Shown: positions 1,337 through 19,940, numbered from the stretch's first letter. The stretch is 64,000 bases of DNA from IMGVR_UViG_3300032050_000004:1-64000; one strand, 5' to 3'. Notes: generated by a model from the letters alone, not told the origin. Made by a program: numbers and translations.

Positions 1337-1435
1337 AAAAATGTAAATTAGTTTTTGAATATCGTATATCTCTTTGGGATTTGACCCCAGTTTTCCCCGG
1401 GATCGCCTGCGGGAAACATCTTGGATACAGCGGGA
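1337..1435. repeat. Phased intergenic element copy A (right half-site plus arm)
   Basis: ATGTAA 1341, N16, CGTATATCT ending 1371; CAG/CGG/CTG at 1388, 1398, 1407, 1428. Confidence 0.85.
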
Positions 1436-1436
1436 T

Positions 1437-1470
1437 AAAAAAAAAGGGCTCGGAAACCCGAACCCTTTTT
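1437..1470. terminator. Bidirectional intrinsic terminator
   Basis: A-run, GGGCTCGG/CCGAACCC hairpin, T-run. Confidence 0.8.
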
Positions 1471-1841
1471 CATTTAATTTTCTTAATCTAAACACACATT
1501 GTTGTTTTTACAAACTTCCTTGTTTTAAGGAAATTACGAATAATTGTAATTTTAGAGGTAAGTCCATTCACCTTTCGATGATTTCTGACACTCTCCATCA
1601 TTTCTTCGTGTATTCGCAAATTAGCATTGTCATAGTTCGCAGTTTTTAAGTTACTTCCAAACATTGACTTAATAATAATTTCGTTTTGTTCGTCTATGCT
1701 TCTTTTCATTTTAATTATTTTAGTTTGTTTCAATACGGATTTTATTAGAAAAGGTTGAACGAAAATAATAAAATTTTATAATTTATTATAATTTTATTTT
1801 AATTAAATCTAAATCATCTCATTATCAAACTATTTAATTAA

Positions 1842-1935
1842 GAAATGTAAATTACTTTTTTCAATTCGTATATCTGATCGAAAATAACCCCCTGTTTTCA
1901 CCAGACACGGGCTTCTGAGTTCCAGAAACGGGTAG
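1842..1935. repeat. Phased intergenic element copy B (right half plus arm)
   Basis: ATGTAA 1845, N16, CGTATATCT ending 1875; CTG 1892, CAG 1902, CAG 1923; terminator at 1941-1973. Confidence 0.85.
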
Positions 1936-1993
1936 AAAACAAAAAACCCCCAACTTTTCAGTTGAGGGTTTTGTATTCACCTTTGATAAATTA

Positions 1994-2878
1994 CTAATAC
2001 TTTATTTTTTCAGTAATAGGTTTAATGTATTCATACAATTCATACTTAACACATAAGTTTACTAATTTGCCTTTTACCGAATAAAACTTTTCTTCATCTT
2101 CACAATTTTCAAATATACTTTCTAAAAAAGTATCCCTTCTTGTTTCATCAGTAATAATATCTGCAACATCTTCTTCTAATTCATTATCCCATTCTTCGTT
2201 TGAATAATAAGATAAACTCCAACCCAAATGTTCACTCATATCACCATCACTTTTTATACTTAAAGCAAATTTAGTTGCTTCGTAACCATTAGGTAAATAT
2301 TCTTTGACCAAATTACCATTGTCAAATACATAAATCCCACAATTATTTCCAATATCCTCATCAGCAAACTTCACTTCAAATAATAAATCAGGATATAATT
2401 CTGCAAGTTTATGAATGACTGGAAAAGGAGTTGACCACGCAGTATCGAATGAAATTGAATTTTCGCTTATTTGATAGTTGTCATAAGAATTCCATTTAGT
2501 TCCCCAATTAGCAATACTCCAACCATACCAATTAGCGTGTCCATATTTTTCAATGTTATCTAATGATATTTTTGCTTCCTCAAAATCTTGGGGAGAAAGC
2601 CTTTCATTTAAAAGTTGCTTTACACCCTCAACATCAGTAATGCCTTGTTCTTTAATCCAACTCCACTCCAACATTTCAGTAAATCTTTGAGTGTTATTTA
2701 TCAAAATACATATAGCATTATCAACATTACTTCCTGATGTAACCCTCAACGAAGGTGGCATAGGGAGAATTTTGTCAAAGTCAATTAAATTTTCATCTTC
2801 TTTTATGAAATCTAAAACTTCTTTTACCCTTTGCTCACTTCCTTTAATTGTGAGGATATTTGTAATGTGATTAGGCAT
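1994..2878 (-). CDS. DUF1281 / YubB (Api92-like) ferredoxin-like fold protein
   Basis: MPNHITN.L.I.G start, WYGWSIANWGTKWN and FDTAWSTP signatures. Confidence 0.8.
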   Translation of the reverse strand: MPNHITNILTIKGSEQRVKEVLDFIKEDENLIDFDKILPMPPSLRVTSGSNVDNAICILINNTQRFTEMLEWSWIKEQGITDVEGVKQLLNERLSPQDFEEAKISLDNIEKYGHANWYGWSIANWGTKWNSYDNYQISENSISFDTAWSTPFPVIHKLAELYPDLLFEVKFADEDIGNNCGIYVFDNGNLVKEYLPNGYEATKFALSIKSDGDMSEHLGWSLSYYSNEEWDNELEEDVADIITDETRRDTFLESIFENCEDEEKFYSVKGKLVNLCVKYELYEYIKPITEKIKY

Positions 2879-3916
2879 AATTTATTCTATTTTTTAATTA
2901 AAATTATTATTCTTCACTCTCTCCTACACCTACATCAATATAATCTATAACTTCCATACCATCCATTTTGGGGAGAAACAACTCCTCATCAGTATATTTA
3001 TCTTCCTTACGGAAACAAACCACAACTGAACCATCAACATCATCCAAATCAAATTTTGTATCATCAAATTCAATTAATGCTACAATAGTAACTACTGCTC
3101 GTTTAAGTGCCATAATTATTATTTTTTTTTAATCAATACGTTTATATTGAAAAAAGGTTTAAAATCTAATGAATAACCTTGAAATGCTCGTCATCAGTTA
3201 GGTGAACCCAACGAAATTCCATATTGTTATTTGACGCTATTCTCAATCCCAGCCAAACACCCGTTTTATTTTCAAAAAAAACCCGTTCCGTTATTGCTTC
3301 AACCACCCATTTCTCTTCTTTATGAATTGTCTTTTCTTTTGCAATTTCTGATATTGGTTCGAGTTTTACTTTATCACCTGTTCTTATATCTAACATAATT
3401 ATTTATTCTATTATCATTACGGATAAAATATAGAAAGGTCTAAAATAAAATTAATTATCTTTATTTTCAATAATTGAAACCATTTCTTTTAAATGATTTT
3501 CCAAATTGATAAGTTCATTTCTTATGTTTTGAATTTCCTCTAATGCTTTATCATATTTTCTGTTTGAGGTGAAAATGACTATTCTATCGCATTGAACTGG
3601 TATTGTCTTATTTGAAAGAACAATGATGTTTTGTTTAAGCTGATTGCTTCTTGTCATTTTATGTTGAGTTTGGTTTTTGTTTGTTCGATTATTTTTAAGC
3701 AAAAATCCTTCGCACTTTGTGGTGAACCATCAACAAACTCACAAGAGAAAGTATGATAATTAACTTCACTCACATAAACCTCATAAACAATAAATGAAAA
3801 TTTTAACTTCTCTATTTTAAGTGTACCATAATGCAATCTTGAATATCCGTTGAATTTTGACTTATCAAAATTGTCAAATTCAATTTTATAATTATCCATT
3901 TTATAGATTTTGTGTT

Positions 3917-4363
3917 TTACAATTTAGCAAGAAGAACATCCTCGTACTTGTAGTGTTTAGTCCCTTGTGTTTCCAAGAAATCAATCCTGTTCTTGAACCT
4001 TTTATTCATTGTATCCACAATAGTATAAACCCCACTCTTATGTCCTGCACCACTAATATACACCTTATCCCCATAATTGAAAACTCCTCCCCATCTTTTG
4101 AGCAAATCCCTTGAAACTGCAATCCATTTATGTTCCGACGCTTTATTTGGATTGATTTTGTACATACCAGCAGTTACCAAAGGGTCTTCATCACATTGAT
4201 TTACCACAGCATTATACATAGTTGCAGTTACCTTTACTGAATTTTGACTCTTAATTAAATCCTCTAATTGGTTAAGACGCTCATCATTTTCTTGTTGAAC
4301 GACCAACATATAAGTTGTATTTATAGCACTCAATACCATAAGGATATATACGGCTTTTTTCAT
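3917..4363 (-). CDS. 3D-domain (MltA-like) peptidoglycan hydrolase with N-terminal membrane anchor
   Basis: VTATMY, IAVSRDLL, YGDKV and VDTMNKRFKNRIDFL (three-Asp motif); hydrophobic N-terminus. Confidence 0.8.
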   Translation of the reverse strand: MKKAVYILMVLSAINTTYMLVVQQENDERLNQLEDLIKSQNSVKVTATMYNAVVNQCDEDPLVTAGMYKINPNKASEHKWIAVSRDLLKRWGGVFNYGDKVYISGAGHKSGVYTIVDTMNKRFKNRIDFLETQGTKHYKYEDVLLAKL

Positions 4364-4416
4364 AGTGGTTGGTTTTTAATCAATACTGATAAAAAACAAA
4401 AAGGTTTAAGAAAATA

Positions 4417-4525
4417 AAAATGTAAATTATCTTTTTAGGATCGTATATCTTGTCTGGAATTTGACACCTAGGGCCAGCAGTCCCGTCCAGTCAATTTCAG
4501 GATTCCACCAGAGAAAATCAGGACA
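4417..4525. repeat. Phased intergenic element copy C (right half plus arm)
   Basis: ATGTAA 4420, N16, CGTATATCT ending 4450; CAG at 4478, 4488, 4498, 4509, 4519; terminator at 4525-4561. Confidence 0.85.
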
Positions 4526-5513
4526 AAAAAAAAGAGAGCCAATTTCTTGACTCTCCTTTTTGAGATACGCAATGTTTTTCAATTCAAGTAATCAAACCCA
4601 AAGTGAATAAATCCCATTTCAATTAAATCATCATCAGACATCTTTTTAGGGTTTCTCCAAAAGTTAGGTTCTTGTTTATTCTCATCCTCTATAAGTTCAC
4701 TAATCCTTTTCAAAGCACCTTCATAGGTGAATTTCTTATCACCATCCGTTCTTTCAGTTTCAATAAACTCATATTTAATTCTCATATTAATCCATGTTTT
4801 GTTTAGCAAATTCAATCAATTTTTTAGCAAGTTCATCATCCAATTCATCCGTTACATCTTCATTATCCTCATCACGAATTTCAATTTCTTTGACAAAATA
4901 ACTATCGTAATCATCGTTGATAGTTACATGATAACAAGTATCCTCAACTTCAATTTCAAACTTGTGTGTTCTATTGATTACCTTGCTTATCAGTTCCATT
5001 GTTTATACAATTTTATAGTTTGTAATTTCTTCATCACTTATTTGGTCAAAAACATAATCTTTATCCAAACCCCTTACCGAAACCGAATCCACAATTTCTC
5101 CTTGTTTGTTAACCCAAATCTGAATATAAAAAGGTTCAGTATACCAAAGGTTGTTTTTTGCAACAGCACTCCAAGTTGTTTTGTGATGGTCAAATTCCTT
5201 TTTGCTAATGTTCATAGTGTTTGGTTTTTTTAATCAATACGAATAAAAAATAGAAAGGTTTAATTTTTTAGATTATTTTTTAATATATTTGTCATAAAAA
5301 ATTCCAAATCTGCCCAAAGTAGTTTTTCAGGAATCAAATTTGTATCTACACAACTCTTTTCATGTTTTGAATACATATATTCTATGAAATCACTCCAACA
5401 TGATTTGCAAACATTTCCAATAGATTGATAAGTGTTATTACAATTTTTGTTTTCACACCCTATTCTTGAACATTTGTTAAAATCCATATTAATACCAATT
5501 AGGATAGAAAAGG

Positions 5514-5858
5514 TTACTCCTCTTTTGCTTTTTTAAATTTATATTTTTTAATTGTGGTTCTTCCTAAACCAAATTTTTCCATTGTTTTTTTAACAGTGTT
5601 AGTTTTTGTGAACTCATAAATTTGTTCTTTGACCTTTTCAGATACGAACTCTACTTTCATTCCAGTATCAGTCAAATTTTCATTTTGACAATGATAATTA
5701 ATAGTTGATTTTGAACACTTCAATTTTTTTTGAATATCACGATAAGAATAACCTTCGTTTCTTAATTTTAAAATATCTTCTTTAATTCCCCTTCTACCAT
5801 TTTCGTGCAATCGGTCTTTATTGGAATTGTTAATTACAATTACGTGTTTAGTTGCCAT
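5514..5858 (-). CDS. Helix-turn-helix DNA-binding protein
   Basis: ILKLRNEGYSYRDIQKKLKCSKSTINYH is a classic HTH; a second HTH-like segment lies near the C-terminus. Confidence 0.7.
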   Translation of the reverse strand: MATKHVIVINNSNKDRLHENGRRGIKEDILKLRNEGYSYRDIQKKLKCSKSTINYHCQNENLTDTGMKVEFVSEKVKEQIYEFTKTNTVKKTMEKFGLGRTTIKKYKFKKAKEE

Positions 5859-5909
5859 ATTTTGTTTTTTAATTTAAATTAATGTCTAAAATATAAATTA
5901 AGGTTACAA

Positions 5910-6125
5910 TTAAGATTGTAAAAATCTTTTGTCCTTAACAAACTTCAAATGTCTTGCTTCATCCTTTGTCAAACCCACGAACTCACTTGGGGAGAATGAA
6001 ATCTCATCGGGGTAATAGTCAAAGAGATATTCTTCCACCCCATTTTCCAAAGTAACGTGAACTTGGGGCATAGGGTCAAATAAACTTTTAGGCATTGCCG
6101 TAATTCGTGCTGAAATTATTTTCAT
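5910..6125 (-). CDS. Conserved small phage protein
   Basis: LFDPMPQV...LFDYYPDEISF..SEFVGLT pattern; clean ORF behind a class-1 promoter. Confidence 0.55.
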   Translation of the reverse strand: MKIISARITAMPKSLFDPMPQVHVTLENGVEEYLFDYYPDEISFSPSEFVGLTKDEARHLKFVKDKRFLQS

Positions 6126-6467
6126 AGTTATCTTGTTTTTTAATCAATACGTTTTTAGGGAGAAAAGGTTTAAGATTTATAAATTATAAATGAGTAAAAC
6201 TCCCACAACCCATACATTGAATATAAGGTTTACCGCTATCTTTTATGGTAGGACTTTCCTTTGGTAAGATTATCCATTCAGTACCTTTGCAATCGTAACA
6301 CTCGCAATTAGGTAATCTCTCATCAAGGGTAAGCTGGTTAGCTATTCTTTCAGGATATACTGATTTTAACACATCAGCTTCAGGAATTTCTACTAATACC
6401 GATTGATAGAACTTTGACATAATTGATTTTTTAATCAATACGAATCAAAGTAAAAAAGGTTTAATTT

Positions 6468-6731
6468 TTAATTTAAAATTATTTGAAAAAATTGAAATCT
6501 TTCCGACTTAAATGCTTTTATATTATCGGTAGGATTTATTTCATCACCATTTCTATCAACTATGGTAACTGCCATTTCGTTGGTATTTAAGGAATCGGTG
6601 ATATACTTTAACTTATAAACTCTGTTCTTTTGGATCCACCTATCAGGTGTGAATTTTGGTAATGAATCATCTATACAAAATGCGAAAACATTAACGAAAG
6701 AAGCTGGTGCTATTAAATCTGCCATACCCAT
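6468..6731 (-). CDS. Hypothetical protein with late-type TATTTAT upstream
   Basis: ORF track; ATAAATA on + at 6741-6747; divergent from the DUF5856-like gene. Confidence 0.5.
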   Translation of the reverse strand: MGMADLIAPASFVNVFAFCIDDSLPKFTPDRWIQKNRVYKLKYITDSLNTNEMAVTIVDRNGDEINPTDNIKAFKSERFQFFQIILN

Positions 6732-6785
6732 ATGTTTATTATAAATAGTTTTTTTTTCGGTCTATTTATAATAAAATTAAAAAAA

Positions 6786-7157
6786 ATGCACCACAAAAGC
6801 GTAATAAAAATAATGAATTTTCAGCAACAAATGAGAATTCTTCATTGGCAAACCACTTCTTTTGCTCGTCATAATGCCTATGGTGGCATATATGATAGCA
6901 TAGATGATTTATTAGATAGATTTGCTGAAATTTGTATGGGTAAATACGGAAGAATTGAGCTTAATGATGAAATTTCTGAGCTTAAACTTAAAAACATGAA
7001 AGACCTTTCCATAAATTCTTATTTAAATGATTTTTGTGAATTTCTTGTTGAATTAACCGGTGAATTTGACGATGAAAAAGATACTGATGTGTTAAATATC
7101 AGAGATGAAGTTCTTGCTGAAGTAAATAAATTAAAGTATTTACTTACTCTTAAATAA
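6786..7157 (+). CDS. DUF5856 ferritin/Dps-like four-helix protein
   Basis: LHWQTTSFARHNAYGGIYDSIDDLLDRFAEICMGKYGR and C-terminal LNIRDEVLAEVNKLKYLLTLK; TATTTAT at 6763; terminator at 7177-7206. Confidence 0.75.
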   Translation: MHHKSVIKIMNFQQQMRILHWQTTSFARHNAYGGIYDSIDDLLDRFAEICMGKYGRIELNDEISELKLKNMKDLSINSYLNDFCEFLVELTGEFDDEKDTDVLNIRDEVLAEVNKLKYLLTLK

Positions 7158-7587
7158 TACACTATGATTTAAGCTGAAAGGGGAGGAAGTTTTTCCTCCC
7201 TTTTTCATTTTTATATTTTTAATATGATACTATAACCCTTTCAAGTTTTTCTACAACCATACAATTACCAACTTTTTCTGCTTTCATTTTTGCAATCCTT
7301 AATGCTCTTTCATAAGTCATTTTTGCACCGTCAACTTTAATAGTGTCAATTACATCTCTGCGAGTAGTCATTACTGTTTTGACAAGTCGAATTATTTGTA
7401 TCGCTTCACAAACAACTGAAATGTCATTAATAGTTTCATTTTTTGAAACTGCAATCTCTGTAGTTTCCAATTTAGAGCCGAATAAATCAAACGAGTTTTC
7501 CATTTTTTCCTTTTTTTAATCAATACGCTTTTTAATTAAAAAGGTTTAAGCTGAATCGAACTGACTAAACCTAAACTTTTCAAATTT

Positions 7588-7730
7588 AGTTATACGAAAG
7601 AAAAAAGATATTTTACACTTTATAAAAATGTAAATTAGTTTTTTAAGATCGTATATCTGATTATAAATATCCACCAGTTTTCACCGTCGACTGCCAGAAA
7701 TTTCACCGTAAACCAAAATACCGAGTTTGG
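7588..7730. repeat. Phased intergenic element copy D (both halves, 9-bp spacer)
   Basis: TACG 7593, N16, TTACAC 7613; ATGTAA 7628, N16, CGTATATCT ending 7658; CAG 7675, CCG 7684, CAG 7695, CCG 7706. Confidence 0.85.
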
Positions 7731-7824
7731 CACATTTTTACTTCCGAAAATGTCTTGTAAAAGATTAACATAAAAAAGAAAAAGCCGCATCTCTGCGGCT
7801 TTATCAATATAATCATTCCTTTGA

Positions 7825-8418
7825 TTACACAATCTTTATTTTACGATTATCAATGTAAATGAATTTTACATTATCAATCCCCACATTGAAAGTTCCAAAT
7901 GCCTCATCACCTCTAATTCCCAAATTGTAACTTCCTTTTGTAGATTTAATCAAAAATGTTTTTAATTGCTCTAATTGAAATTCAGTCGCCTTAACTCCAT
8001 CAACATAATACTCCGTAAAAGTACTCTCGTTTGAATTAGGATTAGTATAAACCCTCAAATACTTAATTGCAGGATTATCTTTCTTTACAGCAATAACATA
8101 GTTATCTCTGCCGTCAGATGATTCCACATAAGTTGATTCAGGTTTATATTCACCCTCAATACCCTTTTGCTCCCTTTGATTGTTACCTTTAGTAGAAGCA
8201 CTTGTATTGCAACCAAAACCCCACTTTGAAACTTTACGAACTCTACCAATAAAAGGATTACCCCTTTTATTCATTTTAGGTTCAGTGTCCGAAACCATAC
8301 TTCCATAAGTATGACTACCACCACGAACATTTTCCATAAAGGAAATAAATTCATCTTTACTCATTACTTCGTGAGAAATCTGATTGCAGATTTGCTCCAT
8401 TCTTTGTTCTTTGGTCAT
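7825..8418 (-). CDS. Conserved phage hypothetical protein
   Basis: 197-aa ORF containing TEPKMNKRGNPFIGRVRK...NNQREQKG; class-1 promoter at 8443. Confidence 0.6.
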   Translation of the reverse strand: MTKEQRMEQICNQISHEVMSKDEFISFMENVRGGSHTYGSMVSDTEPKMNKRGNPFIGRVRKVSKWGFGCNTSASTKGNNQREQKGIEGEYKPESTYVESSDGRDNYVIAVKKDNPAIKYLRVYTNPNSNESTFTEYYVDGVKATEFQLEQLKTFLIKSTKGSYNLGIRGDEAFGTFNVGIDNVKFIYIDNRKIKIV

Positions 8419-8561
8419 TTTGCGATTTTTTTTAGGTTAATATCAATACGGATTTTTTTGTAAAAGGTTTAATAAAACCCCCACATATATAATACGCAGT
8501 AACACCACCAAATCTTTAGTGTAAAATTAAAATATTTTTTAACTTATTGAAAATCAGTATA

Positions 8562-8593
8562 AAAGAAAAAGTCCCGGACTTCGGGACTTTTTT
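8562..8593. terminator. Bidirectional intrinsic terminator
   Basis: AAAAAGTCCCG-GACTT-CGGGACTTTTTT. Confidence 0.8.
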
Positions 8594-8989
8594 CTAACCA
8601 CTATGAAACACAATAAACAATTATAGAACCGAAACAAATATACACAAATTACTTATTCTTAACACTATAACTGTAAGATGAAAAAATAGTCCTATTGACA
8701 AATTCTTTTGTGCTTTCGCTAAATTCAAAACATTTCAATCCGTGAAGAATATTTTTTTCTCCAATACAATCCACTTCTTTCATAAGAAAGGTAATGAATT
8801 TCTCATACACAATATCTTCTCTCATATTATATCTTTTGCTGATGTGAGCAGAAACCTTTTTTAGAGTTGGATGCTTTGTAACATAATCCTCAATCACTTT
8901 TCTTTGGGTAATCATATTGAGTTTAGTTTTAGTTTTACTTACAATACGGATAATTAAAAAAAAGGTTTAAGAAATTATTTTACAGTTAA

Positions 8990-9203: not shown

Positions 9204-9257
9204 AAAAAAAAATCCCCGCTGATTTGCGGGGATTCTCAATTCTATAACAATGATATA

Positions 9258-12044: not shown

Positions 12045-12121
12045 AATAGGTGGTTTATACATTCAATACGGATAAAATAAAAAAAGGTTTAAGACCACCA
12101 CAAAACTATTTTCAAAAATTT

Positions 12122-12275: not shown

Positions 12276-12541
12276 ATAAAAACAAAAAACCCACAACTTC
12301 CGTTGCGGGTTTCAAGCGGGGGAGAATCTCAACCCCTATTATTTAAAGTATTTCTCTGTCTTTCATACTTTTTCCATCAGTTTTATTTGAAATTCCACTT
12401 TCTTCATTAATTCTCTTTGACAATCATCACACCTTTCCCTAAAAAACAATTTGAGATTAGGTTTATTATTATCACAATGTTTGCAAGGTTTCTTCCAAGC
12501 CTTGTCAAAGGCATTATCAGTAATCATACCTTTCATATCCT

Positions 12542-12754
12542 TTATTTTTCTTTTTCGTAACCAATTCCTTTGAAATTATAGTTTCCATTCTTTATTTCAG
12601 CAATATCAGCATCTAATGCTTGCTTATAATCGTCCCTTTTCTTTTCTGCATCCTTACAACTCATACAAATTACATCCTCGTTATACATTGACATAATTGT
12701 AACTCCATTTGTTGATTGGTGACATCGGTCACAATTTTCTCGGTACATTGACAT
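12542..12754 (-). CDS. Small Cys-rich (CxxC...CxxC) conserved protein
   Basis: CDRC...IMSMYNEDVICMSCK...GNYNFKGIG. Confidence 0.6.
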   Translation of the reverse strand: MSMYRENCDRCHQSTNGVTIMSMYNEDVICMSCKDAEKKRDDYKQALDADIAEIKNGNYNFKGIGYEKEK

Positions 12755-13290
12755 AGGTTTTGTTTTTTTTATTTATCAATAAATTCTAAACTTTTATAAG
12801 CAATATCCAATACTGCACCATTATCAAATCTTACTGCTACAAATGTATCCCAACTACCCCACATACCTACTTTATAATTTGGTATAGTTTTTCCACTTGA
12901 ACCCTCAATACATCTTGAATCATACCTTGTCAAATCAACTTTAAGTTTCACTTTTTTGGGTTTACCGCCTATTTGCATATTTCTTCTTTTTTGGTTATGC
13001 TATCAATACGAATAAAATTAAAAAAGGTTTAATTAAAAAACACAAATCATTAAAAAAACAATCGCAGCCAAAATTTGCATTCTATTCAATCCTTTTGAAA
13101 CTCCCTCTCTGCTCATAAAACTTGTCTGAACAATCATAACCAATGCTGAAACTGAAATTATCTTGTCAATCAATAAACACTCATCCCAAGGATGTTTTCC
13201 GAAATACAAAATAGAGAAACAATAAGCAAAATATCCTATGATTGAAAGATGAACTCTGAATGTTCTGAATTGAAGGTTTGTAATCATATC

Positions 13291-13731
13291 TTATGAATTA
13301 GAATTGCTCTTGTAAAATATATTGTATTGAATAGGTAGTCCTTGTGTTGAATTACACACATTCACAGTAGCAATAGAATCGTTTATATTGTAAGTAGAGA
13401 TAAATGGGTGTTCAAATAGATTGCCCGAAACTCTTTTTATTCCACCCTCAAAATAATAATTGAAAGTAAGATTTATTGAATTATCCTCATTTTTGAAATA
13501 CACACAATTCCCAAGTGTTCTTTCTTGATAATCTACATAATCCACAATTCTGTTAATCTTGTAAGGTTTGATATTATGTAGTTCATAATTTTGACCTTGA
13601 TAATTTACTTTGAAAAATAGATTAAAATCCAAATTATCTGAACCATAAACTCTTTCAGGACTGGTCAAAGGTTCTTTCTCGCAAGACGAACAAAGAAAGA
13701 CAATAGATAGAATTATTAGTAGGTTTTTCAT
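13291..13731 (-). CDS. Bacteroidota-type lipoprotein
   Basis: Lipobox MKNLLIILSIVFLCSSC-EKE. Confidence 0.7.
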   Translation of the reverse strand: MKNLLIILSIVFLCSSCEKEPLTSPERVYGSDNLDFNLFFKVNYQGQNYELHNIKPYKINRIVDYVDYQERTLGNCVYFKNEDNSINLTFNYYFEGGIKRVSGNLFEHPFISTYNINDSIATVNVCNSTQGLPIQYNIFYKSNSNS

Positions 13732-13778
13732 AGTGGTTATTTTTTAATCAATACTGATTTTTATTAAAAAGGTTTAAT

Positions 13779-14057
13779 TTAATCCCACTTTCTTACCATA
13801 TAAACATACGATGTATCAATATCCTCCAATTTGAAATTGGGGTTAGTCCTTCTTTGATTATCTACAACTTTCAAATCCATAGTATAGCACCAATCTTTTC
13901 TTTCTTGCTCACTCAATTCGTGTCCTACAAAGAATGAACTGCTCGCATAACCGAACTTTGACTTATCCAAAGTGTAGCAATGATTGTAAACATAATCTTC
14001 CTTTGTGCAAGATGAAAGAGTAAAAATTACTCCGATGATGATGATAAGTTTTTTCAT
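13779..14057 (-). CDS. Bacteroidota-type lipoprotein
   Basis: MKKLIIIIGVIFTLSSC-TKED; class-1 promoter at 14075. Confidence 0.7.
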   Translation of the reverse strand: MKKLIIIIGVIFTLSSCTKEDYVYNHCYTLDKSKFGYASSSFFVGHELSEQERKDWCYTMDLKVVDNQRRTNPNFKLEDIDTSYVYMVRKWD

Positions 14058-14464
14058 AGTGGTTGGTTTTTTAATCAATACGTATTTTATTAGAAAAGGT
14101 TTAAAATAAATATGATTAAATATCATATCTACTTATGTCAAATCCATAACCCATCTCACTACAAATTTTATTTACCCTTGAACAAATATGATATTCAGGT
14201 TCAGTATCATTTACCTCACTATGTTTCTCTGAAATCTTTTTCATACCCTCTGAAATCATTTGTATAACCTCTTCTTTTGTTACACGATACTTTCCTTTTA
14301 CTTTCTTTTCAATCTTCACAACAAGCGAATGACACATCTTATCACCCGATTTTGTAAACATTTCATAACTTGGGATTGATTGTTTGGTTGTGGTTTCCAT
14401 TGTGTTTAGGTTTTTCTATCAGTACGGATTGGGGAGAAAAAGGTTTAATTTACATAGATAATTT

Positions 14465-14662
14465 TCCACCAGTCGTCACCCTGAACTCACCAGTCATCCA
14501 CAGGGAGAGAATTAAAAACAGATATACGATCTTTAAAAGTTATTTTACATTTTTAGGGGAGAGATAAAAATGTAATTTAGTTTTTTCTATTCGTATATCT
14601 CTTGTGGAAATTACCACTGCTGTGGAATCAGGTGAATCGCCGCACGAGGCAGGATTAACAGC
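14465..14662. repeat. Phased intergenic element copy G (both halves, 19-bp spacer, two arms)
   Basis: CWG at 14470, 14481, 14491, 14501; AGATATACGA 14520; TCGTATATCT 14591-14600; CNG at 14620, 14629, 14640, 14650, 14659; terminator at 14663-14694. Confidence 0.9.
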
Positions 14663-14890
14663 AAAAAAAAAGACCGAACTTTCGTTCAGTCTTTGTCAAA
14701 CACCATTGGTGCCATTCCTATTGTTGTCGGGTAATCATCTTATTCATATTTGTAGTCCCCTTCGAATTTAAAACCCGAACTGAACCACCATAAAGATAGT
14801 CTTAATGACCAATACATATTCCTTCCGTGCATCCTTCCATTTACATAGCATTCGTATGCTTTCTTGATTCGATAACGATTTATTTTCATA

Positions 14891-15067
14891 TTAATTTTCC
14901 TCCTCCAATAATTGTTTAATTGATTCGATACATAAACTCATTTCGTGTTGAGGTGAACCCCCTTCTTCTATTTCACTTTGACATAATTCTACTAATCCAA
15001 TAACCTCATCTTTAAGGTTTGGGTGTTCGCTAATAAATTGCTTTGCAAATTGAATTACTTCTTTCAT
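14891..15067 (-). CDS. Small hypothetical protein (58 aa, not in the track)
   Basis: MKEVIQFAKQFISEHPNLKDEVIGLVELCQSEIEEGGSPQHE...; class-1 promoter at 15084. Confidence 0.6.
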   Translation of the reverse strand: MKEVIQFAKQFISEHPNLKDEVIGLVELCQSEIEEGGSPQHEMSLCIESIKQLLEEEN

Positions 15068-15481
15068 AGGTTTTATTTTTTAATCAATACGGAAATAAAT
15101 TAAAAAGGTTTAATTATTAAATAAAAAAAGGGTTCGGTAACCAGCCGAACCCCTAACCATAAAAAACCACCTATGAACCACGAACTTTCTTTATTTCCTT
15201 GCCTTTTCTATCAATACTAATTTAATTTGAAAAGGTTTATTTTTTTTTATTTTTTTTATACTTGCTTTTCTAATAATTATATTTTATTTTAGTTAAAGAT
15301 TAAGCATTACTATTATTGTTTGCTTTAGTCATAGTGTTTTGTTTTGTCCGTAGCCCGTTTAGTCACGGGCTATGGTTTTTTTAGAAGGTGTTGATTGTGT
15401 GAATGAATGAACAAATCATAAATCCACCCAACACCATAACCACAAGCAACTCAATGGTGTATTTAATTTTATTTTCCATTT

Positions 15482-15676
15482 TCAATAGAAATTATAACAT
15501 CCATAACTTTTTACACTTTTGTTCCTCGAATACTTCTTAACATTTGAAGATGAATGTTTTTGAGTTTTTTGTTTGAATTTAGTTATGCTTGAATACGCAG
15601 CACATTGCTCTGTTGAACTACAAGAACTCAAAAACCAAACCGAAATAATTGCCGTTACAATAATTAATTTTTTCAT
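15482..15676 (-). CDS. Small lipoprotein with SC....C.AY motif and basic tail
   Basis: MKKLIIVTAIISVWFLSSCSSTEQCAAY. Confidence 0.65.
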   Translation of the reverse strand: MKKLIIVTAIISVWFLSSCSSTEQCAAYSSITKFKQKTQKHSSSNVKKYSRNKSVKSYGCYNFY

Positions 15677-16191
15677 ATATATAAAGTTTTTAGTTTTCAA
15701 ACAAATAAAACATACCAAAATTGTGTATCCCAACAATGCTTACAACCACATTTCCTTTATTGTCTTTGGGAGCATTCTCAACCATAAATTGAACTGCCCT
15801 CATTTCAGCAATCTTTTGAATAAACTCTTTTAGAGAATTGCTAATTTCGTTATTTTCGTTTTCTTCTTTCATAGTTTTAGGTTTTTAATCAATACGGAAA
15901 TAAATTAAAAAGGTTTATTAGAATCGTAAACTAATTTCATATAGAAATCGCTCACTTCATCCATATCATCAGATTGAAATACTACATTATACCAATCTGA
16001 CCGATATTCACCACCCGAAGTCATAAACATTTTATTATCTTCTTTATTAAGATAAATTACAAATTTCTTTTCAGTATTTGATAGAGGAGGATTTGGGTTA
16101 AATTCTTGTTCTTTGGTCTTTTTCATAGTTCTTGGTTCTTACAATCAATACTTATATTATTAGAAAAGGTTTGAATTAAATTGAAATTTTT

Positions 16192-16430
16192 CTCCCTGAT
16201 AAACATCCTGATTTTTACTGGATCAATCCTGAGAACTGGCGTTTTACAGGGGAGAGTTTTATAAAAGATATACGATATTAAATTTCTAATTTACATTTTT
16301 AGGGGAGAGATAAAAATGTATTTTACTTTTTTTAATTCGTATATCTTGTTTGGAATTTTTCCGCCTTCCAGCTCGAGTTCAGGCTGAGGAGAGGCTCAAG
16401 CGGGAGAAGTCAAAGTTCAGCGGGGGAGAA
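16192..16430. repeat. Phased intergenic element copy H (both halves, 19-bp spacer identical to copy G)
   Basis: CWG at 16196, 16208, 16218, 16229, 16247; AGATATACGA 16266; TCGTATATCT 16337-16346. Confidence 0.9.
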
Positions 16431-16725
16431 TAAAAACGAAAACCCCCACCTCTTGCGAAGCGGGGGTCTTATTTTATTTAGCGGGGGGAGTGCCATATAA
16501 GGCGAGTTCCATTTTCCCCTATCGAAGTGCCGTTGGGTCAATTCGGCTTGTCTATATCGGCTCGGATTTTAATGCCCTGCCTATCGGGAACCCTTTTAGT
16601 TTCTATATATTTTATAAAGATAATTATTAAGATTTAATTTCGGGGGGACTCTTGTTCATCTATATTCGGATTAAGCAATGTTTTGATTTTTTTTATCATA
16701 TAGGGTTATTTTGAATTTACTATCG

Positions 16726-16905
16726 CTAATATCGAAGTTTCGCACGTTTCATTCCTTTCGCAGCAGCCACACTTGGTCGATGCTTGTGATTGTTATATTT
16801 ATGTTTTCCCACATCACGATACGCCCAACAAGTTTCAGTAGATGCACAAGAAGTCATTGTAAGACCATATCCGATAATCATTACAGCAAGAAGGAGTTTT
16901 TTCAT
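16726..16905 (-). CDS. Small lipoprotein (59 aa, not in the track), paralogue-like to 15482-15676
   Basis: MKKLLLAVMIIGYGLTMTSCASTETCWAYRDVGKHK...; class-1 promoter at 16931. Confidence 0.65.
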   Translation of the reverse strand: MKKLLLAVMIIGYGLTMTSCASTETCWAYRDVGKHKYNNHKHRPSVAAAKGMKRAKLRY

Positions 16906-16976
16906 AGTGTTTGTTTTTTTTGTTATACTATCAATACTTTTTTAATTTAGAAAGGTTTAAGATATTTCAATTTTAT

Positions 16977-17246
16977 TTACAAATAATCACTTCCGTTATT
17001 GAGTGTTGTTTTACTTTTAATGAACTCCATTACTTTGTCAGCATAATAAGATGAAGTCAATTCGTTCAGATAGCTCAAAGTTTTCCAATAAGCATCATAT
17101 TCATTTGTCATAAAATTTCCTCCAACAACTTCCTTTTTACTATTGTAGTCAAGTGCTTTAATTGAAAGTGCATTTCCGTTCAAGTCAACCTTGATAATTC
17201 CTCCAACCGCATATTCTCCAATCTTAAATGATTTTGTTGCTTTCAT
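16977..17246 (-). CDS. Hypothetical phage protein
   Basis: ORF track; class-1 promoter at 17262. Confidence 0.55.
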   Translation of the reverse strand: MKATKSFKIGEYAVGGIIKVDLNGNALSIKALDYNSKKEVVGGNFMTNEYDAYWKTLSYLNELTSSYYADKVMEFIKSKTTLNNGSDYL

Positions 17247-17756
17247 AAGTTTGTTTTTTAATCAATACGATTTAATTAGAAAAAGGTCTAATTTTTATCA
17301 AAGAATTATAAATTAAACCACTAATCATAATTGATATAATCATATCGAACCAAACAAATAAAAACAAATCATCCCTTGTTGGTGTTTGAAATAATAAGAT
17401 ACTCATACAACAAATTGTATTTATTAGTAAAATACCAATCAAGGTTGCACCAATGTAATTTGACAAAGTTCTTTCCATATTTTTTTATTTTTTAGATTAG
17501 ATTAAAAAAGGGATATTGTTAATACCCCTTTTTATGTTTATCCTTTCTTGAATAAGTTTTTTTATCCCGATACACTTTTTCTTTGTGTATGTTATACATA
17601 CCCATTTCAAGCATAATATCTCGATGGATACCCTTATCCACTTTCACTTTTTCCTTTGCAGTATTTACCTTTTTCATTGTGTTTTAGTTTTTGTTGGTTC
17701 ATAGTTACAATCAATACTAATAAATTGTAAATAGGTTTAAGAAAAACAAAAAAAAT

Positions 17757-17890
17757 CCCCCCCAGAAACCAGCCCGTTTTTCTGGCTATGCTATAATATA
17801 GATATACGATATTAAAAAGGTATTTTACATTTTTTGCGTTATGCATTTTGTGTAATAAAATGTATTTTATTTATTTCAATTCGTATATCT
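17757..17890. repeat. Phased intergenic element copy I (29-bp spacer) at the minus-to-plus strand switch
   Basis: AGATATACGA 17800, TTACAT 17825, ATGTAT 17860, TCGTATATCT 17881-17890. Confidence 0.85.
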
Positions 17891-18016
17891 GAAATTTACA
17901 ATATCCAATTTTCAAGCACAAACACCTCAAAATATAATTTCATTTATTTTAATTTACCTTAAACCTTTTCCTATTAAATAAGTATTGATAATATAACCAA
18001 CAAAAAAACTACGAAA

Positions 18017-18664
18017 ATGAAAACCACCAACAAAACACTTAATGAACTTATCGCAAAGATTGTTTCAGTTTATGGATGTGATGAACAACAAGTATTGCGA
18101 CTAATTGAAATTACAACGGATATGTCAAAGGGTGCAAAATTTGCAACAATCAAAGATTATTCATCGGACAAATCTGAACATTCTGAAATTGCAAATCATT
18201 CTATTATCTTAAACTTTTCATATAAAAATATGAAAAAAGATGATAAAGAAACTTTGAGAACTTTTGATGTTAATTTAGTTGATGTAAATAAATTCAATTA
18301 TGATAGTATTGATACAAAAGGTATGGAATTGAGTGCATATAAAAATGAAGTAAGAAATTCACTACAAAATGCACTTTATGAAATAAATAACCCTAAACAA
18401 GTTGAAAGGGTAAATAATGATGATTACTTGAATGATATTTTAGTGTTTAATTGGAATACTGAAAGATTGTCAATAATTGGTCAAGGGGTAAAAAAAGAAA
18501 CAATAGTTGAAGGAGAATATAAAAAAGTAAAGTCAGCACCTTTGACAATAGCAAAAAAGTTGATAATGAAACAAGCAAATTTAAGAGTTGATAAATATCG
18601 TAGGTATGCAATAGACAATTTAAGTATTGTTAATTTGCAAGGGGAAAATTTGGAAATTCAATAA
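18017..18664 (+). CDS. Hypothetical phage protein
   Basis: 215-aa ORF behind a plus-strand class-1 promoter (17959); terminator at 18678-18705. Confidence 0.65.
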   Translation: MKTTNKTLNELIAKIVSVYGCDEQQVLRLIEITTDMSKGAKFATIKDYSSDKSEHSEIANHSIILNFSYKNMKKDDKETLRTFDVNLVDVNKFNYDSIDTKGMELSAYKNEVRNSLQNALYEINNPKQVERVNNDDYLNDILVFNWNTERLSIIGQGVKKETIVEGEYKKVKSAPLTIAKKLIMKQANLRVDKYRRYAIDNLSIVNLQGENLEIQ

Positions 18665-18774
18665 AACAAGGCAAATTAAAAGGGGAAAAAATTTCCCCTT
18701 TTTTTATATTAAATCTTAAACCTTTTTAATTAAAATAAGTATTGATATTGTAACCAACTAAAAAACTAAACACT

Positions 18775-18975
18775 ATGAGCAAGGTAAGATTAAAAAAATT
18801 CGCAGTAAATTTCTACAACAATCTTTTGAAGGAAGAAAAAAGAATAGAAATCGAAGCGTATCGCGAAAAGGAAGCAATCGAAATTGCAACTTTGGAATTG
18901 GACATCAAATGTTCGCATTGGACTGAAGAATTAGCAGAGTATTTTACACTACAAAAGGTTGAATTGGTCAAGTAG
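18775..18975 (+). CDS. Small hypothetical protein
   Basis: Class-1 promoter at 18716; terminator at 18996-19029. Confidence 0.55.
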   Translation: MSKVRLKKFAVNFYNNLLKEEKRIEIEAYREKEAIEIATLELDIKCSHWTEELAEYFTLQKVELVK

Positions 18976-19030
18976 GTTTGATAGGTTAAACTTGAAAAGG
19001 GGTTGAACGAAAGTTCGCCCCTTTTTTTTG

Positions 19031-19240
19031 TATCCTGAAATTTCCCGTCAAATCCCTGAACCCGACGGTAAAAAAACAGGTACGATAAAAAACAGATATA
19101 CGATATTAAATTTCTTATTTACATTTTTATAAGGGGTTTGAAAATGTATTTTACTTTTTTTTAATCGTATATCTTATTTGGAAATTTCTCGATCAACTGC
19201 CGGTTCCGGGCTGGAAAATTTCAGGATTGAACCCTGAGAA
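19031..19240. repeat. Phased intergenic element copy J (both halves, 19-bp spacer)
   Basis: CNG at 19035, 19045, 19056, 19066, 19077; AGATATACGA 19094; TCGTATATCT 19165-19174. Confidence 0.9.
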
Positions 19241-19397
19241 ATTTTTTTTCAAAAGATGATAAAGATTGGGATAGAAAATACGTATTACTATTATAAGGGG
19301 TTAATGAAAAATAAATTTTCATACCCACCAAAGATTTGGTTAGGTAAATACGTATTACTATTAGAAGAAGTCAAACAATATAAAACTCAAAAACAAA

Positions 19398-19793
19398 ATG
19401 AAAACAAATGTAGAACAACTTGTAAAGTTTGAAAATGAAACAATGAAATCATTAAATGAATTACGACCTATTGTATTTGACCTTTTTGGTAAAGGTGTAT
19501 TGGGGGTAAAAATGTTTCAAGATGAAAATTACCTTCAAATAACCAATTACACTTGGGGTAGTGAAGAATACATTGAGAAGTTGAATAAACTTGTAACTCA
19601 TTATGAATTTGCCAAAACTTTTTGGTACAATAATTTTAATGTACAAGAAGCAATAGACAAGTATAATCATTATTGTTGTGGTGTACTTATGAGAGAAGCA
19701 GAGAAGAAAAGAATTTTAACCTATGTTTATTTTATTTGGATGCTAAATATGGTAAGTGGAGAATTAAGGAATATCATTGTTTCAAGCAATTAA
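19398..19793 (+). CDS. Hypothetical phage protein
   Basis: ORF track; tandem variant promoters AAAGATT...AAATACGTATTACTATT at 19261 and 19330; terminator at 19814-19843. Confidence 0.55.
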   Translation: MKTNVEQLVKFENETMKSLNELRPIVFDLFGKGVLGVKMFQDENYLQITNYTWGSEEYIEKLNKLVTHYEFAKTFWYNNFNVQEAIDKYNHYCCGVLMREAEKKRILTYVYFIWMLNMVSGELRNIIVSSN

Positions 19794-19845
19794 ATGGAGT
19801 TTGGTAATTTGACAAAGGGGTTGAGAAATCAATCCCTTTTTTTAT

Positions 19846-19940
19846 TCCTGCTGTCCTCCTGTATCCGCCGCAGGTTACTGGCTGTTTACAGTAGGTATTT
19901 ATAAACAGATATACGAATACTAATTACTTATTTACATTTT
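19846..19940. repeat. Phased intergenic element copy K (left half plus arm only)
   Basis: CWG-rich arm 19848-19891; AGATATACGA 19907; TTTACATTTT 19931. Confidence 0.8.

What the first reader, a model, noticed from the sequence alone, without database searches (positions are those of the whole stretch)
1362..19916. The retained half-site faces a terminator: a possible family of ~80-110-nt antisense-oriented small RNAs
Seen: where only one clear half exists (A, B, C in the minus-gene zone; K in the plus-gene zone), it points against gene flow, through its GC arm and into the hairpin ending the neighbouring gene (1437-1470, 1941-1973, 4525-4561, 19814-19843). Paired copies E, G, H and J show the same. 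Several of these hairpins have both A-runs and T-runs, so they could terminate in both directions. Many rightward arms begin GG(A/G)A(A/T)TT. Inference: if the half-sites are promoters, ~10 short non-coding transcripts are made. Candidate roles are R-loop primers (T4 ori-like), sponge or decoy RNAs against host defence, or transcription used to pull DNA in.
Basis: inference. Interest (0 to 1): 0.72.

Follow-up and report, generated by a model that had tools for sequence, protein, structure and literature searches.

The report
Phage promoters making short gene-opposing RNAs
A giant freshwater phage carries about a dozen copies of a strongly conserved promoter-like element that point against the neighbouring genes and run through a short GC-rich stretch into those genes' terminator, so they most likely make a family of roughly 90-140-nt non-coding RNAs, though no transcript data exist.

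Summary
The "CGTA half-sites" are copies of a 35-bp two-block element, P1 (AAAAATGTAAATTA-N11-TCGTATATCT). There are 18 copies in the window, all within 1.3-20 kb, and none in the other 202 kb of the contig.

Overlapping contigs show a genome of about 450 kb. They extend the region to about 48 kb, holding 23 P1 and about 49 copies of a second gene-proximal class, P2. In this phage P2 matches the ECF/sigmaW-type consensus (AAACnTTTT-N-CGTA). The phage encodes an ECF sigma at the left edge of the region, plus two sigma70-type factors elsewhere.

Ten P1 in the window (13 in the region) are "orphans". They oppose the gene flow, cross 60-115 bp of non-coding DNA and reach the convergent operon's terminator hairpin. 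That stretch averages 48% GC across the family, against 29% for the genome. This layout recurs in about 75-86 distinct units from related metagenomic phages.

Best reading: these are sigma-dependent small-RNA genes that share a terminator with the facing operon. The evidence is weak in four ways:
- No RNA data are available.
- There is essentially no covariation.
- The GC-rich bodies are mosaic and poorly conserved.
- The hairpin's U-tract is good on the orphan strand in only about half the units.

R-loop primers and DNA pull-in are not supported.

The parts
1342..1470 (+). Orphan unit A: P1 1342-1370, GC-rich body 1371-1436, A-run plus shared terminator hairpin 1437-1470. It converges on the minus-strand gene ending at 1488.
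   Evidence: MFE z -2.4
1846..1973 (+). Orphan unit B: P1 1846-1874, body 1875-1940, hairpin 1941-1973. It converges on gene 1994-2878(-).
   Evidence: z -2.2
4421..4561 (+). Orphan unit C: P1 4421-4449, body 4450-4524, hairpin 4525-4561. P2(-) at 4380-4407 lies back-to-back 13 nt away.
   Evidence: z -0.4
7629..7805 (+). Orphan unit: P1 7629-7657, long body 7658-7772 (partly AT-rich), hairpin about 7778-7805. It is paired back-to-back with gene-facing P1 7589-7617(-).
   Evidence: z -2.9
9115..9237 (+). Orphan unit: P1 9115-9143, body 9144-9203, hairpin 9208-9237. Its partner is P1 9030-9058(-).
   Evidence: z -3.5
12162..12313 (+). Orphan unit: P1 12162-12190, body 12191-12277 (two GCGGGAGAGAU repeats), hairpin 12286-12313. 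Its partner is P1 12123-12151(-).
   Evidence: z -1.6
14571..14694 (+). Orphan unit: P1 14571-14599, body 14600-14662, hairpin 14669-14694. Its partner is P1 14521-14549(-).
   Evidence: z -2.2
16317..16470 (+). Orphan unit: P1 16317-16345, body 16346-16431, hairpin 16439-16470. Its partner is P1 16267-16295(-).
   Evidence: z +0.35
18995..19123 (-). Orphan unit in the plus-gene zone: P1 19095-19123(-), body 19030-19094, hairpin about 18995-19025. It converges on gene 18775-18975(+). Its partner is P1 19145-19173(+).
   Evidence: z -4.0
19814..19936 (-). Orphan unit K: P1 19908-19936(-), body 19844-19907, hairpin 19814-19843. It converges on gene 19398-19793(+). No divergent partner promoter was found.
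   Evidence: z -2.6
7589..7617 (-). Gene-facing P1, followed by a short AT-rich leader, then P2 7520-7547, then the gene.
9030..9058 (-). Gene-facing P1, followed by a 61-nt leader, P2 8941-8968 and the gene.
12123..12151 (-). Gene-facing P1, followed by a 32-nt leader, P2 12063-12090 and the gene.
14521..14549 (-). Gene-facing P1 with a GC-rich leader, then P2 14419-14446 and the gene.
16267..16295 (-). Gene-facing P1 with a GC-rich leader closed by CUCUCCCCUG/CAGGGAGA, then P2 16145-16172 and the gene.
17801..17889 (.). Divergence point of the region. P1 17801-17829(-) and P1 17861-17889(+) both face genes. The minus leader carries a terminator-like hairpin plus U-run before P2 17711-17738.
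19145..19250 (+). Gene-facing P1 19145-19173. Its 75-nt GC-rich leader ends in a sense-strand intrinsic terminator (19219-19239 plus T8) before gene 19256. This is a possible eleventh short RNA, or an attenuator.
1153..18745 (.). P2 promoter class (tTAAACCTTTT-N11-CGTATTGAT). There are 27 copies in the window (25 minus, 2 plus), each 14-25 nt upstream of an ATG. None occur outside the early region.

Best explanation
The 'half-sites' are a class of phage promoters, P1: an A-tract, TGTAAATTA, an 11-nt AT-rich spacer, then TCGTATATCT. P1 works alongside a second class, P2, inside a host-takeover region of about 48 kb made of small genes. The phage is about 450 kb, infects a Bacteroidota-like host and brings its own sigma factors.

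Thirteen of the 23 P1 copies (10 of 18 in the window) drive no gene. Each lies upstream of, and divergent from, the next operon's promoter. Each points at the 3' end of the previous operon. Each is followed by 60-115 nt of GC-rich non-coding sequence, an A-run, and that operon's terminator hairpin.

The most likely product is a family of about 90-145-nt non-coding RNAs. Each would have a short single-stranded 5' end (often GGAAUUUGACCCCUG), a variable body containing repeats that folds locally, an A-rich linker, and the shared hairpin as its 3' end.

Shown here: the motif, its confinement to one region, the layout, its conservation in relatives, the lack of ORFs, and the phage sigma genes.

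Inferred: that P1 fires, and that transcripts stop at the hairpin. That inference is likely for the half of the units with at least 5 U; the others probably run on as antisense RNA into the facing gene.

Also inferred: that the RNA rather than the act of transcription is the functional output. The likely mode of action is a conserved 5' seed acting in trans, as in FopS or RybB-type sRNAs, or a decoy role.
For: - P1 is confined to the region and far above chance.
- Eight P1 sit correctly upstream of operons.
- P1 and P2 share a CGTAT block. Their upstream blocks lie 15 and 16 nt from it.
- P2 equals the sigmaW-type consensus tGAAACnTTTt/CGTA (PMC5758882).
- An ECF sigma gene lies at the left edge of the region. 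It is conserved in relatives at 62-79% identity.
- Two more sigma70-type genes are present.
- The layout holds across relatives. In 61/66 orphans a convergent ORF ends within 90 nt of the hairpin. Only 2/66 have a same-strand ORF. In 51/73 a divergent P1 or P2 lies within 220 nt.
- The distance from the end of P1 to the hairpin end is constrained: median 101 nt, range 83-148. Body GC is 48% against 29% for the genome.
- Folding: whole units in the window have a mean z of about -2.1. Bodies alone have a mean z of -0.73, p = 1e-4.
- The 5' segment is semi-conserved.
- Internally repeated 6-mers occur in 29/46 bodies against 11.2 +/- 2.8 in shuffles.
- P1 is invariant across lineages in which P2 has diverged.
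- Precedents for phage and Bacteroidota multicopy sRNAs: PMC11512511 and PMC11697453.
Against: - No transcript evidence exists. The runs laid on 14000-19999 were flagged probably DNA and were contigs of related strains.
- RNAalifold on eight ortholog groups gives weak consensus structures and 0-2 compensatory pairs.
- A family-wide closing-helix test is only marginal (permutation p = 0.036).
- In orthologous positions the body is usually the least conserved segment: 45-72%, against P1 62-100% (mostly 76-100%), terminator 64-100% and gene 63-100%.
- The U-tract on the orphan strand is weak in about half the units.
- No Rfam family matches.
- No complementary targets of 12 nt or more were found in the phage beyond chance.
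- The P1 -35-like block (TGTAAA) lacks the AAC hallmark of ECF promoters, and which sigma reads P1 is unknown.
- P1 invariance is partly an ascertainment effect, because relatives were found by scanning for P1.
Confidence: 0.5

Rival explanations
1. Boundary or insulator element: the act of convergent transcription matters, not the RNA. An orphan P1 placed head-on behind each operon's terminator stops read-through polymerases by collision or occupancy. Firing divergently from the next operon's promoter, it may also supply local negative supercoiling. The GC-rich spacer is then only a collision or buffer zone.
For: - Orphans sit behind 10 of 13 strong terminators in the window.
- 70% have a divergent gene promoter within 220 nt, often only 10-23 nt away.
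- The body sequence is poorly conserved and cassette-like, while P1 and the hairpin are conserved.
- The hairpins are optimised for the gene strand.
Against: - It does not explain why a fast-changing spacer is held at 48% GC in a 29% GC genome.
- It does not explain the conserved 5' segment and shared words.
- It does not explain the internal repeats or the excess folding.
- GC bodies also follow some gene-facing P1.
- Unit K has no divergent partner.
- Three terminators do without an orphan.
Confidence: 0.22
2. Cis-antisense regulators. Orphan transcripts largely read through the weak orphan-strand terminator. They then act as antisense RNA, or by transcriptional interference, against the last gene(s) of the facing operon, for example to shut off part of the early programme.
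For: - Orphan-strand U-tracts are at least 6 of 8 in only 13% of units.
- Every orphan faces a gene 3' end.
- ECF-dependent antisense RNAs and the lambda OOP RNA are established precedents (general knowledge).
Against: - It does not explain a dedicated GC-rich segment of 60-115 nt before the hairpin.
- It does not explain why the units are so uniform in length up to the hairpin.
- About half of the hairpins do have at least 5 U on the orphan strand.
Confidence: 0.12
3. PeSL-like recombination cassettes. P1 and the hairpins are conserved landing pads for homologous recombination that shuffles small early genes. Orphan orientation and variable bodies are by-products, tolerated only where a terminator follows.
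For: - Orthologous loci carry unrelated bodies between conserved P1 and hairpin.
- The same hairpin types recur with different bodies.
- The region consists of small genes; only one of them was scanned against protein families.
- PeSL precedent: PMC2839356 and PMC4122927.
Against: - 13 of 23 P1 being by-products is too many.
- The layout is uniform in many lineages.
- GC-richness and length constraint point to selection on the unit itself.
- This rival is compatible with the main explanation and would add to it rather than replace it.
Confidence: 0.08
4. P1 is not a promoter. It is an operator or other protein-binding site (for example for a regulator, replication or partition protein), and the paired copies are inverted-repeat binding sites. 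Alternatively, the orphans prime replication through R-loops.
For: - Copies often occur as inverted pairs with discrete spacings (10-11, 21, 56-58 nt).
- P1 does not match the Bacteroidota sigmaA consensus recalled from the literature (by eye).
- The bodies contain G clusters.
Against: - P1 is directional, and eight copies are placed like promoters, upstream of leaders and genes.
- It shares its CGTAT block and near-identical block spacing with P2.
- Six orphan copies in the region (A, B, C, -1117, -5031, -18420), plus unit K, are single rather than paired.
- Thirteen dispersed origins in 48 kb would be without precedent.
Confidence: 0.06

Closest known systems
PeSLs (promoter-early stem-loop cassettes) of T4-type phages (PMC2839356, PMC4122927)
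   Same: Both are repeated intergenic cassettes of about 100 bp that combine a strong early promoter with a terminator stem-loop. Both are concentrated in a plastic region of small genes. Both are associated with mosaic exchange between related phages.
   Different: In a PeSL the stem-loop and promoter serve the same gene direction: terminator first, then the promoter for the next gene. Here the promoter points into the hairpin, against the genes, with a dedicated GC-rich segment of 60-115 nt between them. The promoters are not host sigma70-type. Mini-circles and recombination were not tested.
FopS multicopy sRNA family of Bacteroides (PMC11697453)
   Same: Both are families of a dozen or more paralogous sRNA-like units in a Bacteroidota setting. 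Each has its own promoter, a conserved 5' stretch, variable downstream sequence and a terminator hairpin.
   Different: There is no sequence or Rfam match. The units here are longer (90-145 nt against about 65-70 nt) and have a GC-rich folded body. They are phage-encoded, driven by a non-sigmaA motif, and always convergent with a gene. No targets or binding protein are known.
ECF-sigma-dependent sRNAs (RybB, MicA, MicL of the E. coli sigmaE regulon); general knowledge, not tested here
   Same: In both, an alternative sigma regulon includes short terminated non-coding RNAs with 5' seeds. These give an activator-only sigma a repressing arm.
   Different: It is not known which sigma reads P1. The copy number is far higher. 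No Hfq-type chaperone is expected in the host.
sigmaW-type ECF promoters (tGAAACnTTTt-N-CGTA; PMC5758882)
   Same: P2 of this phage is tTAAACCTTTT-N11-CGTAT, with 16 nt between AAAC and CGTA. P1 has the CGTA block and a TGTAAA block 15 nt upstream. The phage sigma scores best against SigW models among named equivalogs.
   Different: P1 lacks the AAC of the -35 element. In related phages P2 reads GGTATTAAT or AGAAYTGAT instead of CGTATTGAT, so CGTA is a lineage state and not a fixed hallmark.
Lambda OOP RNA and short intergenic or 5'UTR-derived sRNAs of jumbo phages (OOP from general knowledge; PMC11512511)
   Same: Both are short phage transcripts with their own promoter, running against or between genes and ending at a nearby terminator.
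   Different: OOP overlaps the coding end of cII and is a single copy. Here the overlap with the facing mRNA would be limited to the shared hairpin unless read-through occurs, and the unit is present in 13 copies.

Membership tests
PeSL cassette | Composite of an early promoter and a terminator stem-loop in one conserved intergenic unit | tested here: met
   P1 plus a hairpin is present in 10 window units and 75 units in relatives.
PeSL cassette | Stem-loop ends upstream transcription and the promoter drives the next gene in the same direction | tested here: not met
   Orphan P1 points into the hairpin. 61/66 face a convergent ORF and 2/66 have a same-strand ORF.
PeSL cassette | Sites of modular exchange between related phages | tested here: inconclusive
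   Bodies differ between conserved P1 and hairpin at orthologous loci. Breakpoints were not mapped.
FopS / known Rfam RNA family | Match to the family covariance model | tested here: not met
   Nothing reached the gathering score in 64 kb. Only sub-threshold terminator-like hits appeared in 1-20.5 kb.
ECF (sigmaW-type) promoter | -35 AAC followed by a T-tract, -10 CGTA, spacer 14-17 | tested here: met
   This holds for P2: AAAC-C-TTTT, with 16 nt to CGTA, in about 49 copies. Consensus from PMC5758882.
ECF (sigmaW-type) promoter | The same features applied to P1 | tested here: inconclusive
   CGTA is present, and TGTAAA lies 15 nt upstream, but the final C of AAC is replaced by A.
ECF sigma regulon | A cognate sigma encoded with the promoters | tested here: met
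   A 225-aa ORF has Sigma70_r2 and r4_2 domains and matches TIGR02937 at E = 1e-25. It lies at the left edge of the region and is present in relatives. Which promoter class it reads was not tested.
Bidirectional intrinsic terminator | GC hairpin with a U-tract on both transcripts | tested here: inconclusive
   Gene strand: at least 6 of 8 U in 100% of units. Orphan strand: at least 5 of 8 in 52% and at least 6 of 8 in 13%.
Structured ncRNA family | Conserved secondary structure supported by compensatory changes | tested here: not met
   0-2 compensatory pairs in eight ortholog groups. Only modest excess folding.
CsrB/RsmZ-type protein sponge | Many GGA motifs exposed in loops, and a CsrA partner | tested here: not met
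   GGA is enriched (z = 7.1) but more paired than average (0.36 unpaired against 0.49). There is no CsrA (PF02599) or RRM (PF00076) in the phage contigs. A host partner was not testable.
Cis-antisense RNA (OOP type) | Transcript overlaps the coding region of the facing gene | not testable with these tools
   This depends on read-through of the hairpin, and no transcript data exist.

The most novel reading that the evidence does not exclude
A roughly 450-kb Bacteroidota megaphage uses one invariant promoter class to make a battery of more than 10 paralogous, rapidly diversifying, repeat-bearing small RNAs during host takeover. These RNAs act as decoys or sponges for a host RNA-binding or defence factor, or as seed-based silencers of host mRNAs. 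They would be an RNA arm of a phage sigma cascade, with each gene nested head-on behind an operon terminator.
Probability: 0.2. Interest if true: 0.8.

Novelty: new variant of a known kind. Interest (0 to 1): 0.55.

Why it matters
If the orphans are transcribed as predicted, this phage group devotes more than half of one promoter class to non-coding RNAs. That would be an unusually large sRNA family for a phage, in a host phylum whose RNA biology differs from the model bacteria: no Shine-Dalgarno use, and no Hfq or CsrA according to the literature.

The finding also yields a clean, testable system: two promoter classes confined to one 48-kb region, three phage sigma factors, and lineage-specific variants of one class. 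This is well suited to working out a sigma cascade in an uncultured megaphage. It could also supply orthogonal promoter/sigma parts for Bacteroidota.

If instead the orphans act only through transcription, they would be a compact natural design for insulating adjacent operons.

Tried and rejected
- Rfam at gathering and E-value thresholds gave nothing meaningful. tRNA/tmRNA search found none in the window.
The 'RNA-Seq' runs were flagged probably DNA and held contigs of 90-99% relatives, so they were unusable.
- Cultured relatives: there is no nucleotide match in the phage collection. The DnaE-type polymerase is at most 33% identical to anything there.
- One IMG/VR scan was wasted on a mis-counted spacer. 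The corrected scans found only this phage in IMG/VR.
- The genome-collection scan for P1 gave only single chance hits, so it gave no host clue.
- Phage RNA polymerase: no Rpb2_6 match in G000. No DxD[GA]D motif in ORFs of at least 150 aa in G000 or in G001 36-96 kb. The giant ORFs have no family hits.
- Structure: single-sequence folds show no common shape. Alifold on eight groups was weak. The cognate versus non-cognate 5'/3' pairing test was marginal.
- Trans targets in the phage: antisense 12-mer matches were not above shuffles. GGAATTTGAC occurs elsewhere only as scattered copies.
- CsrA-type sponge: GGA is enriched but not loop-exposed, and there is no CsrA or RRM gene.
- Restriction-site decoy idea: the bodies hold no CCWGG at all, like the rest of the genome.
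- Mini-ORF reading of UUGUUUGGAAUUUGA: rejected because the start codon is not conserved.
- SD-like reading of GGGAGAG: rejected because 0 of 142 long ORFs have an SD.

Full report
**Observation**

Reading 1200-5000 and extracting every CGTATA site shows that the "half-site" is part of a longer directional element. I call it P1: AAAAA-TGTAAATTA, an 11-nt AT-rich spacer, then TCGTATATCT.

At 2 or fewer mismatches the 222,069-bp contig holding the window has 18 copies. All lie between 1342 and 19936, and the reversed-pattern control gives 0. At 3 or fewer mismatches there are 25 matches against 6.6 +/- 2.5 in shuffles.

Ten copies oppose the local gene direction: 1342+, 1846+, 4421+, 7629+, 9115+, 12162+, 14571+, 16317+, 19095- and 19908-. 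Each runs through a GC-rich stretch into the hairpin that ends the facing gene. Eight copies face genes.

**Context**

The window is the start of a viral contig with 29% GC. A second IMG/VR contig (G001) is 100% identical to window 1-12366 and extends about 96 kb to the left. A third (G002) overlaps G001 at 99.65-100%. The outer ends of G000 and G002 both break inside the same Gly/Ser-repeat gene. The three contigs therefore tile at least 448 kb. This is probably a megaphage of about 450 kb, and CheckV's figure of 87% complete for G000 is misleading.

None of 142 long ORFs has a Shine-Dalgarno core, and the region upstream of start codons is A-rich. This fits a Bacteroidota-type host. No cultured relative exists.

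**Two promoter classes and the phage's own sigma factors**

A second motif, P2 (tTAAACCTTTT-N11-CGTATTGAT), lies 14-25 nt upstream of the ATG of nearly every small gene in the region. Across the tiled genome both P1 (23 copies) and P2 (about 49) are confined to one stretch of about 48 kb. In window coordinates it runs from about -27.6 kb to +20 kb.

In this phage P2 is a letter-for-letter fit to the sigmaW-type ECF consensus, tGAAACnTTTt for -35 and CGTA for -10. It has 16 nt between AAAC and CGTA (PMC5758882). P1 shares the CGTAT block. Its upstream block, TGTAAA, lies 15 nt away.

At the left edge of the region the phage encodes a 225-aa ECF sigma. It has Sigma70_r2 and r4_2 domains and matches TIGR02937 at E = 1e-25. 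Among named models it scores best against SigW, though below the cut-off. Two sigma70-type ORFs of 285 and 287 aa lie elsewhere in G002. No phage RNA polymerase was detected.

The promoter reading of the CGTA elements therefore gains real support. Which sigma reads which class remains untested.

P2 has diverged into three lineage-specific forms in related phages: TAAACC/CGTATTGAT, GTAACC/GGTATTAAT and GATACC/AGAAYTGAT. P1 is unchanged in those phages, and their ECF sigma is 62-79% identical. This suggests that P1 and P2 are read by different factors. The invariance of P1 is partly an ascertainment effect, because the relatives were found by scanning for P1.

**The orphan units**

A metagenome scan returned more than 100 loci from related phages. 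After removing duplicates there are 86 orphan and 25 gene-facing P1 units. Of the orphans, 75 have a clear A-run plus hairpin.

The layout is uniform:
- In 61 of 66 units a convergent ORF of at least 50 codons ends within 90 nt of the hairpin. Only 2 of 66 have a same-strand ORF.
- In 51 of 73 units a divergent P1 or P2 lies within 220 nt upstream, often only 10-23 nt away.
- The distance from the end of P1 to the end of the hairpin has a median of 101 nt (range 83-148).
- Body GC is 48% against 29% for the genome.

The hairpins are primarily the terminators of the protein-coding operons. The U-tract is at least 6 of 8 on the gene strand in all 75 units. On the orphan strand it is at least 5 of 8 in 52% and at least 6 of 8 in 13%. 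About half of the orphan transcripts may therefore read on as antisense RNA.

Two gene-facing P1 (19145+ and 17801-) also have GC-rich leaders that end in sense-strand terminator-like hairpins before the gene. "P1, then body, then terminator" thus looks like the basic unit. Other gene-facing P1 have short AT-rich leaders, so the GC body is a payload rather than part of the promoter.

**Is the RNA itself under selection?**

The evidence is mixed.

For selection:
- GC-rich islands are maintained in an AT-rich genome.
- Whole units in the window fold better than dinucleotide shuffles. Z-scores run from -4.0 to +0.35, with a mean of about -2.1.
- Bodies alone have a mean z of -0.73, p = 1e-4.
- The usual predicted shape has four parts: a free 5' end, one closed body domain, an A-rich linker, then the terminator hairpin.
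- The first 25 nt or so are semi-conserved: GGAAUUUGAC in 41/86 units, followed by a C-rich box.
- Shared words are strongly enriched: AAACGCC(A/G)G, GUUCAGGA, CCAGAAA, CGGGCU and GGGAGAG.
- Internally repeated 6-mers occur in 29/46 bodies against 11.2 +/- 2.8 in shuffles.

Against selection:
- No Rfam family matches.
- RNAalifold on eight ortholog groups gives weak structures with 0-2 compensatory pairs.
- A family-wide test of a 5'/3' closing helix is marginal, p = 0.036.
- At orthologous loci the body is usually the least conserved segment (45-72%). P1 is 62-100% (mostly 76-100%) and the terminator 64-100%. Whole bodies are sometimes replaced.
- No complementary targets of 12 nt or more appear in the phage.
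- A CsrB-like sponge reading fails. GGA is enriched but not loop-exposed, and the phage has no CsrA or RRM gene.

**Interpretation**

I commit to sigma-dependent small-RNA genes that share a terminator with the convergent operon, at confidence 0.5. In this reading the conserved 5' end is the likely functional seed, or the repeat-bearing body acts as a decoy. The layout keeps a strong promoter from reading into genes, and it lets two promoters share one upstream region.

The main rival is that only the act of convergent or divergent transcription matters, acting as an insulator or through supercoiling (0.22). It explains the poor conservation of the body but not the body's GC content, words, repeats and length constraint. 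Read-through antisense regulation (0.12) and PeSL-like recombination cassettes (0.08) are partly compatible additions. Non-promoter or R-loop-origin readings are unlikely (0.06). Transcription-driven DNA entry does not fit promoters that fire against the gene flow.

**Comparison with known systems**

- PeSLs of T4-type phages are the closest known cassettes, but the promoter orientation test fails.
- FopS of Bacteroides is the closest functional analogue. It is a multicopy family with a conserved 5' seed, variable downstream sequence and a terminator. There is no sequence or model match.
- SigmaE-dependent sRNAs and the lambda OOP RNA are analogies from general knowledge.
- Short transcription units in which a start site is followed directly by a terminator have been reported as sRNAs in jumbo phage 201phi2-1.

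I rate this as a new variant of a known kind. The individual parts are familiar. The systematic head-on nesting of a multicopy promoter-plus-RNA unit behind operon terminators is not, and neither is its setting in a phage with its own sigma set.

**Limits**

Everything about transcription is inferred. The host is unknown. Alignments of mosaic bodies are poor, so covariation may be under-detected. The relatives were collected through P1 itself.

Noticed in passing
whole contig G000 (window included), plus 100 kb of G001/G002: CCWGG occurs 0 times, against a Markov expectation of about 156 in G000 and about 64 in the other 100 kb. GCGC also occurs 0 times (expected 34 and 19), and CGCG is strongly depleted. 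Yet the half-words CCAG, CAGG, CCTG and CTGG are 5-9 sd enriched in the GC bodies. This looks like complete avoidance of two restriction-type sites.
   Followed up: partly
G000 1-222069, G001 (L012, L016-L018), G002 (L154-L156): Three near-identical contigs tile at least 448 kb, and both outer ends break in the same Gly/Ser-repeat gene (G000 219288-222069). The window probably belongs to a megaphage of about 450 kb, not a 222-kb genome that is 87% complete.
   Followed up: partly
L149:1393-2070 (+), which is G001 69882-70559, about 26.4 kb left of window position 1: A phage-encoded ECF sigma factor (225 aa) sits at the left edge of the P1/P2 region. It lies downstream of the leftmost P2 and of a 283-aa ORF with no Pfam match. 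The next gene carries a cREC_REC domain (PF20274).
   Followed up: partly
L148:1003-1866 (-) and L148:1972-2829 (-), i.e. G002 about 67.8-69.6 kb: Two adjacent sigma70-family ORFs (287 and 285 aa) with RpoD/RpoS-like regions 1.2, 2, 3 and 4 lie in the far part of the same genome.
   Followed up: partly
loci of related phages, e.g. L029, L058, L092, L097: The gene-proximal promoter class P2 exists in three lineage-specific versions with identical geometry (TAAACC/CGTATTGAT, GTAACC/GGTATTAAT, GATACC/AGAAYTGAT). P1 is unchanged in those lineages. This is a possible case of promoter and sigma co-evolution.
   Followed up: partly
window 19940-20450: A non-coding stretch of about 500 bp lies just right of the last P1. 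It holds repeated A5-T5-rich words and two copies of GGATCAACCAAC. It also has two GGAATTTGAC-like words on the minus strand without a P1. Its function is unknown.
   Followed up: no
window 19145-19250 (+) and 17740-17829 (-): Two gene-facing P1 have leaders that end in sense-strand terminator-like hairpins with U-runs before the gene. These are possible attenuators or further short RNAs.
   Followed up: partly
G000 132155-153032 (-): Three adjacent giant ORFs (1739, 2580 and 2505 aa) have no meaningful family hit. PHROGs was run on the first two and Pfam on the last two. None contains a DxDxD motif.
   Followed up: partly
window 5514-5858 (-): A 114-aa early protein has a resolvase/sigma-4-like helix-turn-helix (HTH_7 E = 8e-8; a weak Sigma70_r4_2 match). 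It is a candidate small DNA-binding regulator inside the region.
   Followed up: no
G000 193094-193392 (-) and 162498-165908 (-): There is a tRNA-Arg/Met/Asn cluster. There is also a DnaE-type (Pol III alpha-like) DNA polymerase that is at most 33% identical to any deposited phage.
   Followed up: no
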